Assembly: GCA_002269645.1 (NCBI GenBank)
Contig: NIVC01004416.1
Span: 1 to 46,785, forward strand
Length of the DNA stretch: 46,785 nt
From: Macrostomum lignano
Lineage: Eukaryota
Direction of reading: 5' to 3'
The notes under the pieces are model-generated. The model did not search any database. It had not been told where the DNA came from and saw only the letters and a list, made by a program, of their open reading frames with translations. Shown in pieces: positions 17,284 through 23,959 of this stretch. The stretch's first letter is position 1. The number at the start of each line of letters is the position of its first letter. Made by a program: the position numbers and the translations under genes.

Positions 17284-20200
17284 ATGAGCGGAGGGCAGAG
17301 AAACAGTCTCCAGGTGCCGGTGGCTCCGGGGGACACAACGCCGCTACCAAATGCTCCCGGGACCGTGTCGAGAATGTCTGACGACGCCAGCTCTTCAAGC
17401 TTTCCAATGGCTTCTTCGACTAAGGCGGGAACGACCGAGATTGACATGAAGATTCGCGGACTGATGGCTAAACAGGGGAAAGAGACTTTCCGGTTTCTGC
17501 GATGGTGCAAAGGGAATCCACTGAGTGAGACTGGTGAGTCAGCTTGTTTGAGCTCTTATTAGGGATGTGCGAAGGTTGGTAAACTTTTTTACCTCAAGGG
17601 CCGGAGGATAGAGATGACAGATGACATGAGAGAGAGAGAGAGGCGAGGGAGACGATGGAGAGAATAGAGCTGAAAAGAGACATCAACCTTAAAGCGGGCC
17701 GGATTTTTATTGTGCAGTTTGCCAACCCCTGATGACAGACTCTCTTAAAGCTTCATCAAGTCAAGATTAATGTTAGCTCTTGACTTTTGAATCCGTTAAT
17801 TTCATACCCATTAACTAAGGCAAGCGACAGCAGATGATCAAGCTGATGTTCATGACCCTGGTGCCTGTACTCGCCTTGACAATCATCACCGTGCTCAGCA
17901 TGGTGAAAGTGCAACAGTCCAATGCTATGCGAACGAAAATTCGCGACATGATCCGATTCAGCATGGAAACAGGCACCGTGATTCATTTTCTGCAACGAGA
18001 GCGGGACATGACGGCGCTGCATCTGACTAGTCAGGGTGCCGAGACGCGACTGTTTCTGCGGGAGCGCTATCCTGCCACGGACACGGCGCTGGACAAACTG
18101 TCCATGTGGCCCGAGAAGTCGTCGGACGGCAACAGCCTGAGCCAATTCGGTTCGGTGAAAGATTTTCAAAAGTTTCTGAGGAAGCATCGCATGGAACTGA
18201 ATTCTGTCAAGACTAAGCCTTACGATGTGAGTTTAGCATATATCTATGGTTTTAGGCTGCACAAAGCATGCAGTGTTAAAGAGAGAGAGGGAGAGAGAGA
18301 GAGCGAGAAAGAGGCAGGGAGATAGAGGGAGAGAGAGGAGGGCACCTCCAATCTCAGGCACTGCCACAGTGAAAAAGGACTGAGAAGTCAATAAGGTTAT
18401 TGTTGCTGCTATTTCGAATTTGGTAAATTCTTCGTCAGGGTGAGTAGAGAGAGAGAAAGGAGATAGAGGGAGAGAGGAGAGAGAGGAAAGAGGAGAGAGG
18501 AGAAAAGAGAGAGACAAATAGAGGAGAGAGATAGGAGAGAGAGGAGAGAGAGAGGAGAGAGGAGAGAAAGGAGAGAGACAGAGAGAGGCGATGGGTTTAG
18601 TCCAAGAACCACTAAAAGTTGCGATTATACCAGGACGACAATGCTCGCGTTCCCTAGAAATTGATTTGAAGGCCCGACTTCGATTAGAAATGTATCGGCG
18701 AGTCATGAACTTTTTTAGCTCTTAATTGACAATCTCTCACACTCGGGCTTTCAATAATTATACGGAAAGATGGAAAATTTCATTTATAAAGACATTAAAA
18801 ATACAGAAAAACTATGATTTTTATTTATTCTAGTGCGTTTCCCTGTCTCCAAAGGAATTTTATCTGAATTTAAGTCGATAAACTAGTGATATTGTTGATC
18901 ATATTGATCGTGTTGATCTTTGTTATTATAGCAGAGGATACGATAATAATAATAATAAATTAATTGGGCCAGATGTGCAACCGACAGCTCATCCACAGCT
19001 ATTGCACCTGAAGGCTGCGTACGGCTGTTCAGTCCAAGGACTGGGGGTCGCCACACACCCTCAATTACCCCAGCTAATGCTGGCGCCCATTTTACAGCTG
19101 GGTGAACTGAAGCAATGCAGAGTTAAGTGTCTTGCTCAAGGACACAGATTGCTTCAGTGGAATCAGGGCTCGAACCCCTGACCTTCAAGTCGTGAGTCCG
19201 AGGCTCTGACCACCAGGCCACAACCCCTACTAAAGGACACGAAATCGTCCATAAAAAGCCTTTTAAAAGCGAAATTGAGCCTTCAAAAATTGTACATATA
19301 GAACTATCACGTTTTGACGTAACTTCTAACGGTTCTTGGTTTAACCCGATGGTGGGAGCTATTGATAGATACTCGAGCCAGTGCCATCTATCATATACTA
19401 CACTCAATTCTTCGAATACTTTGCACTGAGCCGTGACGCACAAAAAACCACGTGTCTAACATTGCTGAATCCCGCAGGAGATCTCATTCTACACGAAAAT
19501 GATCCGCAGCTTCATAGATATAGTCTACAACTACATCCAGGAGTCCAAGGATGGCGACCAGTGGCGCGAGATGGTCGCCTACCAGCTGTTGATCATTTCC
19601 AAAGAGGACATGGGCGTTGAACGAACCCTTGGCGGGGTGTTCTTTGCCCAGGGTCAATTCGACACCTTCACGGACTACCTGTGGTACCAGGAGAAGCACA
19701 CGGTTGGCGTCGGCAATTTCGCCGCCTCCAAGCGATTCTCCGAGCTAGTTGGCGGGGTATTCGAGGAAGAGCAGGACAAAGCTTCCAGCAATTTTTCCGT
19801 ATCGATTGATCAGATGCGACAGCAGATTAGCCGGAACAATGCCAGCTGGGTGTCGCTTGAGATGTCCACCTGGTGGTTTGATAACATGACCGTTTTTATT
19901 GACATCATGTTCCAGGTGCAGCTCAGACTGGTGAGTTTGAGGACTGATTTTTGACTAGGCTGGCACGTCTTAGTCAAAGGATCCGCGATAGCTTTTCTGG
20001 CGCCTACCGTATGCAAAATCTGGCATTCCTGACACCCGATTGGCGTCTCTGACACCCGATTGGCGTCTCTGACACCCGATTGGCGTCTCTGACACCCGAT
20101 TGGCGTCTCTGACACCCGATTGGCGTCTCTGACACCCGATTGGTGTCTCTGACACCCGATTGGCGTCTCTGACACCCGATTGGCGTCTCTGACACCCGAT

Positions 20201-23200: not shown

Positions 23201-23959
23201 CAACCATAAATCCTCAAAAAAATTCCAGCCGGAAAGCTGCACATGAGCGAGCAGAGCCGCAACTACCTTATCAACGATACTAAATACAAAATTCAACCGA
23301 GAGGAAAGGTTGAGATCGCTGTGAGCTCCAGTACTATAACTTATTAAATTGCATGTACTGTAGCTTAGGATGTTCAGCTCCACTACTATTTAGATAGTAT
23401 TTGACTTTCATTTTTCTCAATCTAAACTTTGGGATACATTGAAATATGTATTTTTAAAAGAAAACGTGCCTTAAAAAAGAAATGTTCATTAAAAAGAAGT
23501 ACGTACATGTACTTTTAAACGGGAATGTACTTTTAAAGGAAATGTACTATTAAAAAGAAATTTTTTTAAAAGAAAATGTAATTTTACTGATCTGTTGCAA
23601 TCCGCAGCCTGGCAGGGTGGAGTGCACCTACTGGCTGACTGAGAAGGAAGGGCTCATTTTGAGTTTCAAATGCTGGCCAAAGTGCATCGAAGATCCAACA
23701 GAGTTTCTGGCTGAGCTGGCCGAGGCTAACAAGGCAAGTCGATTCTGTCGAGCTCAATCTCGTCTGAACTGACCCTGAAGTAGACCTGAGTTTCTTTTAA
23801 GCAGACGCTTCGACCGAAGCCGAGCTTACCCTGAAGTAGCTCGTATCCCAAATTCTTATTGCACTCCCACTCGCATTTCAGACCCAGACCATTCACCTGA
23901 TGGGCGGCGACCTTGCTGACGATCCTGTACAACAGGAAGAGAACGGCACCAACGTCTGA
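17284..23959 (+). CDS. NIT-domain transmembrane guanylyl cyclase (NIT-GC); exons 17284-17533, 17820-18226, 19478-19930, 20735-21091, 22390-22495, 22613-22849, 23229-23320, then either 23608-23772 (688 aa) or 23608-23733 + 23882-23959 (701 aa)
   Basis: In-phase exons give TM1 ([21 protein letters not shown]) and NIT-like motifs ([50 protein letters not shown]). Then TM2 ([22 protein letters not shown]), signalling helix ([22 protein letters not shown]) and class III cyclase motifs ([59 protein letters not shown]). Glu (KVET) and Cys (RYCL) indicate guanine specificity. Confidence 0.88.
18281..18588. repeat. Two AG-rich purine tracts (18281-18340 and 18445-18588) in NIT-GC intron 2
   Basis: Directly visible (GA)n / GGAGA runs. 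Confidence 0.85.
18967..19227 (-). mobile_element. tRNA-derived CORE-like SINE (copy 2, in NIT-GC intron 2)
   Basis: Reverse complement reads GGGGTTGTGGCCTGGTGG...GGTTCGAGCCC (A/B boxes), then TGTGTCCTTGAGCAAGACACTTAACTC...CTGTAAAATGGG and the same 3' part as copy 1, followed by an ATT-rich tail. Confidence 0.82.
20029..20617. repeat. Minisatellite, 20-bp unit (CTGACACCCGATTGGCGTCT) with longer composite variants
   Basis: Directly visible, NIT-GC intron 3. Confidence 0.96.
21107..22341. repeat. (TAGT)n microsatellite, ~1.2 kb
   Basis: Directly visible; fills almost all of NIT-GC intron 4. Confidence 0.98.

What the first reader, a model, noticed from the sequence alone, without database searches (positions are those of the whole stretch)
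17284..23959. NIT-domain guanylyl cyclase: a heme-independent candidate NO/nitrite/nitrate sensor
The spliced model is N-tail, TM, NIT-like domain, TM, signalling helix, guanylyl cyclase, with no kinase-homology or H-NOX domain. NIT is a bacterial nitrate/nitrite-sensing domain. NIT-GCs are a little-studied invertebrate family, absent from vertebrates, and one annelid (Platynereis) member has been reported to make cGMP in response to NO. The topology resembles a bacterial chemoreceptor coupled to cGMP output. None of the supplied ORFs shows the whole protein.
Basis: partly seen in the sequence, partly recalled or inferred. Interest (0 to 1): 0.7.

Follow-up and report, generated by a model that had tools for sequence, protein, structure and literature searches.

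The report
Flatworm NIT-domain receptor guanylyl cyclase gene
The region holds an intact, already deposited gene of the flatworm Macrostomum lignano for a two-pass membrane guanylyl cyclase whose outer sensor is a bacterial-type NIT (nitrate/nitrite-sensing) domain; it belongs to a known, little-studied family, and it matters mainly because flatworms are reported to lack nitric oxide synthase.

Summary
Window 17284-23959 (+) holds a nine-exon gene whose 701-aa product is identical to GenBank PAA47539.1 (BOX15_Mlig015433g2, "hypothetical protein", Macrostomum lignano). The window is contig NIVC01004416.1 of assembly Mlig_3_7, whose annotation is RNA-seq-guided.

The protein reads: disordered N-tail, TM1, NIT domain, TM2, signalling helix, class III cyclase.
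- **NIT domain:** Pfam E=3.9e-25. Its AlphaFold model matches NasR (4AKK) with TM-score 0.82.
- **Cyclase:** E=1.8e-55, with all metal, transition-state and guanine-specifying residues present.
- **Absent:** kinase-homology, ANF-receptor and H-NOX domains.
- **Ligand pocket:** the two NasR pocket arginines (R50, R176) align to R145 and R268, invariant in all 35 aligned homologues (one has a gap at R268).

The gene is a new (flatworm) member of the known NIT-GC family (Moroz 2020; Jokura et al., Platynereis NIT-GC1). Its function is inferred only.

A published survey reports that all Platyhelminthes, M. lignano included, lack NOS. An endogenous NOS-to-NIT-GC loop is therefore unlikely here, and an exogenous or non-NOS nitrogen oxide ligand is favoured.

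Two further near-identical gene copies exist; one carries R145Q. A downstream second copy of exons 6-8 is probably an assembly or homeologue mosaic.

The parts
17284..17533 (+). Coding exon 1: start ATG and the N-terminal cytoplasmic tail (aa 1-83). The tail is predicted disordered up to about aa 50. It contains the conserved juxtamembrane motif C75-x-G-N-P-L.
   Evidence: donor GTGAGT, phase 1; CxGNPLTxxGKR motif conserved in homologues; pLDDT<50 for aa 1-50; the upstream ATG at 17235-17237 is out of frame in this copy.
17820..18226 (+). Coding exon 2 (aa 84-219): G84-K85-R86 motif, TM1 (aa 89-112 = 17834-17905) and the first half of the NIT domain. It includes helix 1 with L-Q-R-E-R145 (the R145 codon is 18002-18004).
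   Evidence: R145 aligns to NasR R50; R145 invariant in 35/35 homologues.
19478..19930 (+). Coding exon 3 (aa 220-370): second half of the NIT domain. It includes G-V-E267-R268 (the R268 codon is 19622-19624) and three N-X-S/T sequons (N324, N340, N355).
   Evidence: E267/R268 align to NasR E175/R176; these sequons are conserved in 17, 24 and 28 of 35 homologues.
20735..21091 (+). Coding exon 4 (aa 371-489): end of the last NIT helix, TM2 (aa 388-411 = 20786-20857), signalling helix/dimerisation coiled coil (aa ~412-455), and the start of the cyclase domain with metal-binding D474.
   Evidence: aligns to NPR1 786-1024 from aa 415; (a single predicted helix spans aa 346-445).
22390..22495 (+). 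Coding exon 5 (aa 490-524): cyclase domain, K-V-E514-T-I-G-D518 (guanine-specifying Glu and the second metal Asp).
22613..22849 (+). Coding exon 6 (aa 525-603): cyclase domain with R565, C586 (guanine-specifying Cys), N593 and R597.
23229..23320 (+). Coding exon 7 (aa 604-634): cyclase domain. The donor is GTGAGC at 23321. The nearer GT at 23309 would delete four conserved residues.
   Evidence: [17 protein letters not shown] aligns without a gap to RGxVExKGKGxxxTYWL; the deposited protein uses 23320.
23608..23733 (+). Coding exon 8 (aa 635-676): end of the cyclase fold (TYWL) and the C-terminal C656-W-P-K-C660 motif. It ends at a GC donor (AAG|GCAAGT).
   Evidence: (the GC donor is conserved in all three gene copies).
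23882..23959 (+). Coding exon 9 (aa 677-701) with stop TGA at 23957-23959. This is a weakly conserved acidic tail.

Best explanation
This is an intact, transcribed Macrostomum lignano gene for a NIT-domain receptor guanylyl cyclase (NIT-GC).

Shown:
- The protein has a cytoplasmic N-tail and two membrane passes.
- Between the passes lies a roughly 270-residue all-helical NIT domain of the NasR fold.
- After TM2 comes a coiled-coil signalling helix and a class III cyclase domain. That domain carries, in one chain, every residue needed for catalysis and for GTP selectivity, so it can work as a homodimer.

Inferred:
- The NIT domain faces outward (or into a lumen).
- A small nitrogen oxide species (NO or a product of it, nitrite or nitrate) binds in the cleft between its two four-helix bundles, at R145 and E267/R268.
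- The resulting shift of the last NIT helix is passed through TM2 and the signalling helix, which are predicted to form one continuous helix with it, to the cyclase dimer. This changes cGMP synthesis, as in bacterial chemoreceptors and sensor kinases.
- Flatworms are reported to have no NO synthase. The ligand here is therefore most likely exogenous (pore-water or microbial nitrite, nitrate or NO) or made without NOS, rather than a neuronal NO signal as in Platynereis.
For: - **Gene model and identity:**. The annotation is RNA-seq-guided (PMC5730564).
- **Domains:**
- **NIT fold:** the animal NIT profile hits NasR 4akk_A at E=6.7e-8, with LQRER and GVER aligned to NasR R50 and E175/R176. The AF2 model has pLDDT 89.8 and pTM 0.88. 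The Foldseek top hit is 4akk_A (TM 0.82, E=7.8e-6), and the next fold scores only TM 0.34.
- **Pocket residues:** R145 is invariant in 35/35 homologues and R268 in 34/34 (one gap); E267 is conserved in 33/34.
- **Catalysis:** D474, E514, D518, R565, C586, N593 and R597 are all present. The closest solved relatives are NPR1 and GC-C (E=6e-70 and 2e-66).
- **Helical continuity:** predicted helices span aa 82-154 and 346-445.
- **Outward-facing NIT:** sequons inside NIT are conserved in 17, 24 and 28 of 35 homologues, against 0, 6 and 1 of 35 for sequons after TM2.
- **Selection:** three gene copies are all open. g2 vs g3 shows 20 synonymous and 4 non-synonymous differences.
- **Family function:** Platynereis NIT-GC1 raises cGMP after SNAP only with its NIT domain.
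- **NOS absent from Platyhelminthes, including M. lignano:** PMC10728431.
Against: - No ligand has been shown to bind any animal NIT domain. The Platynereis assay cannot separate NO from nitrite or nitrate.
- Platynereis NIT-GC2 acts in phototransduction with no demonstrated NO dependence, so not every NIT-GC need be a nitrogen-oxide sensor.
- The NasR pocket itself is a prediction.
- Topology is inferred. Charge counts around the TM segments are uninformative.
- This protein departs from family-conserved residues at W234I, C403A and G637R.
- I could not check the absence of NOS myself.
- No expression pattern is known.
Confidence: 0.6

Rival explanations
1. The NIT domain does not sense nitrogen oxides here. 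It binds another small ligand, or serves only as a dimerising or regulatory ectodomain of a tonically active cyclase controlled from inside the cell, as proposed for ciliary NIT-GC2 of Platynereis.
For: NIT-GC2 shapes the light response without shown NO dependence. Flatworms lack NOS. No animal NIT ligand has been measured. The family has many paralogues (15 in Platynereis; 241 clusters at E<=1e-30), which suggests diversified ligands. W234I departs from a residue conserved in 32/34 homologues.
Against: Both pocket arginines and the preceding glutamates are strictly conserved with bacterial NasR. The NIT domain is required for the SNAP response of NIT-GC1.
Confidence: 0.25
2. It is the receptor for endogenous, NOS-derived NO, working exactly as Platynereis NIT-GC1 does in retrograde neuronal signalling.
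For: Same family and architecture.
Against: The NO_synthase domain is reported absent from all 33 flatworm genomes and 49 transcriptomes examined, M. lignano included. The closest relatives in my tree are nemertean and gastropod proteins of unknown function. Orthology to NIT-GC1 could not be tested because no Platynereis sequence was available.
Confidence: 0.1
3. The locus is a decaying duplicate or an annotation artefact in a highly redundant assembly, and not a working gene.
For: The assembly has 180 Mb of >=95% identical duplicated blocks. Three near-identical copies exist, and a partial second copy of exons 6-8 lies in the same contig. Older gene models of the locus are frameshifted or fused (P0092, P0094).
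Against: All nine exons are open and the splice sites are intact in all three copies. Synonymous changes predominate (20 vs 4). All invariant family residues are kept. The transcript model derives from RNA-seq.
Confidence: 0.03
4. The cyclase makes cAMP rather than cGMP.
For: PF00211 covers both adenylyl and guanylyl cyclases.
Against: The Glu (E514) and Cys (C586) that specify guanine in receptor guanylyl cyclases are present (established knowledge of class III cyclases). The best solved relatives are NPR1 and GC-C, far ahead of adenylyl cyclases.
Confidence: 0.02

Closest known systems
Platynereis dumerilii NIT-GC1 (Jokura et al., bioRxiv 10.1101/2023.08.02.551600) and the metazoan NIT-GC family first described by Moroz et al. 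2020 (PMC7400543)
   Same: NIT domain (PF08376) flanked by membrane segments, then a C-terminal guanylyl cyclase; no kinase-homology, ANF-receptor or H-NOX domain; the two conserved NIT arginines.
   Different: The host is a flatworm reported to lack NOS. The closest sequences are nemertean 'uncharacterized proteins' at 54-55% overall identity in the multiple alignment (55-57% in BLASTP local alignments). Orthology to NIT-GC1 or NIT-GC2 is untested, and there are no functional data.
NasR NIT domain, Klebsiella oxytoca nitrate/nitrite-responsive antiterminator (PDB 4AKK)
   Same: Same double four-helix-bundle fold (TM 0.82). The predicted pocket residues R50 and E175/R176 are conserved as R145 and E267/R268.
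   Different: 18% sequence identity. NasR is soluble and couples to an ANTAR RNA-binding domain. Here the domain sits between two membrane passes and couples to a cyclase.
Receptor guanylyl cyclases NPR1/GC-A and GC-C (PDB 9bcv, 8fx4)
   Same: The dimerisation coiled coil plus catalytic domain align over aa 415-645/668 (E=6e-70 and 2e-66), with the same catalytic and guanine-specifying residues.
   Different: No ANF-receptor ectodomain and no kinase-homology domain. Two membrane passes instead of one, and no signal peptide.
Bacterial transmembrane sensors (chemoreceptors and sensor histidine kinases such as NarX/NarQ) with a periplasmic helical-bundle sensor between two TM helices
   Same: Topology TM1, helical sensor, TM2, cytoplasmic signalling helix. 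The helices are predicted to be continuous across the membrane.
   Different: The output is a eukaryotic class III cyclase. NarX/NarQ sensors are single four-helix bundles of another family, and no HAMP domain was detected.
Soluble guanylyl cyclase (haem/H-NOX NO receptor)
   Same: Class III cyclase domain and the coiled-coil part of HNOBA.
   Different: No H-NOX haem domain and no full HNOBA/PAS. The protein is membrane-bound and able to act as a homodimer.

Membership tests
Metazoan NIT-GC | NIT domain (PF08376) above Pfam's gathering score | tested here: met
   90 bits against a cut-off of 24.9, E=3.9e-25, profile 2-238/239.
Metazoan NIT-GC | The NIT region has the NasR-type double four-helix-bundle fold | tested here: met
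   AF2 pLDDT 89.8. Foldseek 4akk_A TM 0.82, E=7.8e-6, probability 1.00; the next fold scores TM 0.34.
Metazoan NIT-GC | The two conserved arginines at the inter-bundle interface (NasR R50 and R176) | tested here: met
   R145 and R268 align to them and are invariant in the homologues.
Metazoan NIT-GC | The NIT domain is flanked by two transmembrane segments | tested here: met
   Kyte-Doolittle peaks at aa 88-112 and 387-415. Both lie within long predicted helices.
Metazoan NIT-GC | C-terminal class III cyclase domain of the receptor-GC type | tested here: met
   PF00211 E=1.8e-55; best PDB relatives are NPR1 and GC-C.
Metazoan NIT-GC | Groups with other animal NIT-GCs rather than with other cyclases | tested here: met
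   The top 43 hits all carry NIT plus cyclase, and ordinary receptor GCs follow only at 35% coverage. The NJ tree places it beside a nemertean clade. This is a distance tree without support values.
Metazoan NIT-GC | NO-donor-dependent, NIT-dependent cGMP production | not testable with these tools
   Shown only for Platynereis NIT-GC1.
Guanylyl (not adenylyl) cyclase | Metal-binding Asp pair, transition-state Asn/Arg, and guanine-specifying Glu/Cys in one chain | tested here: met
   D474, D518, N593, R597, E514, C586 and R565 are present. The residue roles come from established knowledge of class III cyclases.
Natriuretic-peptide-type receptor GC | ANF-receptor ectodomain (PF01094) and kinase-homology domain (PF07714/PF00069) | tested here: not met
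   Neither was found at E<=1. Both are listed for the NPR-like hits.
Soluble guanylyl cyclase | N-terminal H-NOX haem domain (PF07700) | tested here: not met
   No HNOB match. Only HNOBA profile positions 179-216/216 (the coiled coil) match.
Bacterial NIT nitrate/nitrite sensors | Binding of nitrate or nitrite by the NIT domain | not testable with these tools
   The fold and predicted pocket residues are shared. Binding is unmeasured.

The most novel reading that the evidence does not exclude
In an animal that has no NO synthase, this outward-facing NIT domain works as a chemoreceptor for environmental or microbial nitrite or nitrate (or non-enzymatic NO) and turns it directly into cGMP. That would make it the first identified animal cell-surface receptor for a nitrogen oxyanion. 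The sister copy carrying R145Q would be a natural pocket variant with altered or lost ligand sensitivity.
Probability: 0.3. Interest if true: 0.75.

Novelty: new member of a known kind. Interest (0 to 1): 0.4.

Why it matters
What animal NIT-GCs actually bind (NO itself, nitrite or nitrate) is an open question. The only functional test, on Platynereis NIT-GC1, used an NO donor and could not separate these.

A conserved, selectively maintained NIT-GC in a flatworm offers a cleaner system for that question:
- The phylum is reported to have lost NOS, so there is no endogenous NOS background.
- M. lignano is transparent and amenable to transgenesis (PMC7053086, PMC5730564).
- Its near-identical gene copies include a natural substitution of one pocket arginine.

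Beyond that, the gene is an ordinary family member that is already deposited, as a 'hypothetical protein'.

Tried and rejected
- **684-aa model:** using the nearer donor at 23309 was rejected. It deletes four residues that align in all homologues, and the deposited protein uses 23320.
- **688-aa read-through end:** not excluded as a minor isoform. The deposited transcript model and the GC donor conserved in three copies favour 701 aa.
- **Look-up of my spliced model:** Identity was reached instead through a NIT-only homology search and cluster look-up.
- **Taxon identification from the upstream permease exon:** the homology search found nothing.
- **Platynereis NIT-GC sequences for a joint tree:** no supplementary files are held, so orthology to NIT-GC1 or NIT-GC2 is untested.
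- **A second NIT-GC gene downstream:** rejected. Only exons 6-8 recur, and no further NIT or N-terminal cyclase exons exist in the window.
- **tRNA or tRNA-derived origin of the interspersed repeat in intron 2:** ARAGORN found no tRNA in the window.
- **Positive-inside rule for topology:** uninformative.
- **Literature:** a search for the locus tag or for NIT-GCs in flatworms found nothing.
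Full report
**What is there.** On the + strand between 17284 and 23959 lie nine coding exons with consistent phases: 17284-17533, 17820-18226, 19478-19930, 20735-21091, 22390-22495, 22613-22849, 23229-23320, 23608-23733 and 23882-23959. All introns are GT-AG except the last, which is GC-AG with the typical AAG|GCAAGT donor. Joining them gives 701 aa. Reading exon 8 on to the stop at 23770-23772 gives 688 aa. An alignment with 35 homologues shows conserved sequence running straight across every junction, for example GNPLSETG|KRQQM, KPYD|EISFYT, QLRL|AERI, VPVQ|VVNML, MVSSG|VPKRNG and RGKVEIA|[10 protein letters not shown].

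**Identity of the sequence.**
- A homology search with the NIT region alone found Macrostomum lignano fragments at 94-98% identity.
- The cluster of one of them contains PAA47539.1 (P0101, 701 aa, 'hypothetical protein BOX15_Mlig015433g2'; UniRef 'Guanylate cyclase domain-containing protein'), seen on a contig of 46,785 bp, the length of the window.
- Its sequence is identical to my 701-aa model.
- The gene is called at 17284-23959 of NIVC01004416.1 in assembly GCA_002269645.1.
- That annotation was made from a genome-guided RNA-seq transcriptome (PMC5730564), so the exon joins, including the GC-AG intron, rest on transcript data.
- Older gene models of this locus are broken. P0092 fuses the upstream permease exon to NIT-GC exons, and P0094 is frameshifted.

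**Domains.** Pfam gives three matches and nothing else at E<=1:
- NIT (E=3.9e-25, nearly the whole profile, aa 137-374);
- Guanylate_cyc (E=1.8e-55, aa 461-630);
- only the last 38 positions of HNOBA, the coiled coil (aa 417-454).

There is therefore no kinase-homology, ANF-receptor or H-NOX domain. Two hydrophobic stretches, aa 89-112 and 388-411, flank the NIT domain.

Solved relatives of the C-terminal half are NPR1 (E=6e-70) and GC-C (E=2e-66), aligned from aa 415. Soluble GC and adenylyl cyclases are much weaker.

All residues that class III cyclases need are present in the one chain. The residue roles come from established knowledge of the family:
- metal binding: D474 and D518;
- transition state: N593 and R597;
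- R565;
- guanine selection: E514 and C586.

A homodimer could therefore be active and should make cGMP.

**Is the inter-TM region really NIT?**
- A profile of 27 animal NIT regions finds NasR (4AKK) as its only significant PDB hit, at E=6.7e-8 over 244 positions.
- That alignment puts LQRER145 on NasR R50 and GVE267R268 on NasR E175/R176. These are the residues predicted to line the nitrate pocket (Moroz et al.).
- The AlphaFold model of aa 113-386 is confident (pLDDT 89.8, pTM 0.88) and all-helical.
- Foldseek against the PDB returns 4akk_A with TM-score 0.82, E=7.8e-6 and probability 1.00. The next unrelated fold scores only 0.34.
- R145 is invariant in all 35 homologues and R268 in 34 of 34.

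**How it is likely to work.** The full-length model (pLDDT 80.6) predicts one helix from aa 82 to 154, covering the juxtamembrane motif, TM1 and the first NIT helix. It predicts another from aa 346 to 445, covering the last NIT helix, TM2 and the signalling helix. The cyclase fold follows.

This is the layout of bacterial transmembrane sensors. A ligand-induced shift in a helical periplasmic bundle travels along a continuous helix into the cytoplasmic output.

The cyclase must be cytosolic, so the NIT domain should face outward. In support, the three N-X-S/T sequons inside NIT recur at the same places in 17, 24 and 28 of 35 homologues. The three sequons after TM2 recur in 0, 6 and 1. Charge counts around the TM segments do not help.

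Ligand binding, outward orientation and the transmission mechanism are all inferences. The only experiment in the family is that Platynereis NIT-GC1 raises cGMP after the NO donor SNAP and loses this without its NIT domain. The authors state that nitrite and nitrate cannot be excluded.

A 2023 survey reports that the NO_synthase domain is absent from all 33 flatworm genomes and 49 transcriptomes examined, naming M. lignano (PMC10728431). I could not verify this with the tools. If it holds, this NIT-GC cannot be the receiver of a NOS-derived signal as in Platynereis. Exogenous or non-enzymatic nitrogen oxides, or a different ligand, become the likely input. That makes the flatworm gene a useful test case for what NIT-GCs sense.

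**State of the gene.**
- Only a few positions depart from residues shared by at least 85% of homologues. The non-conservative ones are W234I, C403A and G637R.
- The assembly holds two more copies: g1 on NIVC01000382.1 and g3 on NIVC01004535.1.
- All three copies are open, with every splice site including the GC donor conserved.
- g2 differs from g3 by 20 synonymous and 4 non-synonymous changes, and from g1 by 7 and 6. This points to purifying selection.
- The redundancy fits the known hidden polyploidy and duplicated assembly of the DV1 line (PMC5704211 abstract).
- Copy g3, and an independent older model (P0102), carry R145Q, a loss of one pocket arginine.

**Relatives.**
- The best hits are nemertean (Lineus, Tubulanus) 'uncharacterized proteins' at 55-57% local (BLASTP) identity, 54-55% over the full alignment. 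Gastropod, hemichordate, echinoderm and bivalve proteins follow, and a second M. lignano paralogue (P0015) stands at 44%.
- A neighbour-joining tree puts the window protein beside the nemertean clade. It is a distance tree without support values.
- A profile search of 1.84 billion representatives finds 241 clusters at E<=1e-30 and 5,598 at E<=1e-3.
- The family was described by Moroz et al. 2020 and studied functionally by Jokura et al..
- I found no paper on this locus or on NIT-GCs in flatworms.

**Verdict.** This is a new, flatworm member of a known family. It is already in GenBank under an uninformative name, and its function is inferred from homology. Interest is moderate: it is ordinary as a family member, but well placed for testing the ligand question.

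Noticed in passing
window 22566-26565 vs 32546-36544; 31174-32542 vs 37694-39096: A block of about 4 kb recurs 10 kb downstream at 96-99% identity. It holds NIT-GC exons 6-8 and, on the minus strand, the 3' exons of a PRP38-like gene. A further 1.4-kb PRP38 piece recurs at 90-94%. The second exon 6-8 set (32593-32829, 33309-33400, 33681-33845) has intact splice sites and 5 differences, all synonymous. The two other gene loci (L002, L003) hold this block only once. The window's second copy is 99.5% identical to L003 but about 97% to the first copy, so an assembly or homeologue mosaic is more likely than a recent tandem duplication.
   Followed up: yes
L003 (NIVC01004535.1), gene copy g3, codon 145; also P0102: The sister copy Mlig015433g3 has R145Q (LQREQDM). 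This replaces the NIT arginine that is invariant in all 35 homologues and aligns to NasR R50. It appears in two independent assemblies or annotations, and the rest of the ORF is intact.
   Followed up: partly
window 26552-31137, minus strand: An apparently complete LTR retrotransposon. It has 177-bp LTRs (26552-26728 and 30961-31137, 96% identical) around one open 1367-aa ORF (26816-30919) with RT, RNase H, integrase zinc-binding and integrase core domains. It is absent from the corresponding place in L002 and L003. Only coordinates and domains were recorded.
   Followed up: partly
window 21107-22341 (intron 4): A (TTAG)n microsatellite of 1.2 kb (about 309 copies of the 4-base unit, reported by TRF as 154 copies of period 8; 96% matches) fills most of intron 4.
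   Followed up: no
window 20029-20617 (intron 3): About 30 copies of a 20-bp tandem repeat (CTGACACCCGATTGGCGTCT), with a 77-bp higher-order period in its second half.
   Followed up: no
window 18967-19133 and 8640-8810 (opposite strand): An interspersed repeat of about 170 bp at 88% identity, with one copy in intron 2. It looked tRNA-like by eye, but ARAGORN finds no tRNA in the window.
   Followed up: partly
window 17235-17283: An upstream ATG at 17235-17237 would add 16 residues in frame in copy g1 (717 aa). In the window and in g3, a C5 run instead of C4 puts it out of frame, leaving a short upstream ORF. The Met at 17284 is the first start shared by all three copies.
   Followed up: yes
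window 23671-23685 (aa 656-660): A C-terminal Cys-x-Pro-x-Cys motif (CWPKC here; LPCMPGC in nemertean, gastropod and the other M. lignano protein) is conserved in this sub-clade just after the cyclase fold. Its role is unknown; it could be a lipidation, metal or redox site.
   Followed up: no
window 15481-15960 (+); 38809-39519 (-) and 31643-32182 (-): Neighbouring genes. Upstream is the last exon of an amino-acid permease (AA_permease_2, E=5.7e-6). Downstream, on the opposite strand, is a PRP38 splicing-factor gene (E=7.9e-24), convergent with the NIT-GC gene. An Arg/Asp-rich ORF (26132-26533, repeated at 36111-36512) lies in the same block. It gave no Pfam match, and by eye it looks like the PRP38 C-terminal tail.
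   Followed up: partly
window 11660-14101; 36485-38140; 39276-40500; 9300-10450: Long simple or tandem repeat tracts. One is CT-rich with GC skew near -0.99 at 12-14 kb. Two are about 20- to 23-bp-period arrays at 9.3-10.5 kb and 39.3-40.5 kb. Another array lies between the duplicated blocks. This fits the repeat-rich M. lignano genome.
   Followed up: no
representative proteins P0142, P0155, P0191 and others: Some relatives of 900-1385 aa match the NIT profile in two or three separate stretches. They are either tandem-NIT proteins or merged tandem gene models.
   Followed up: no
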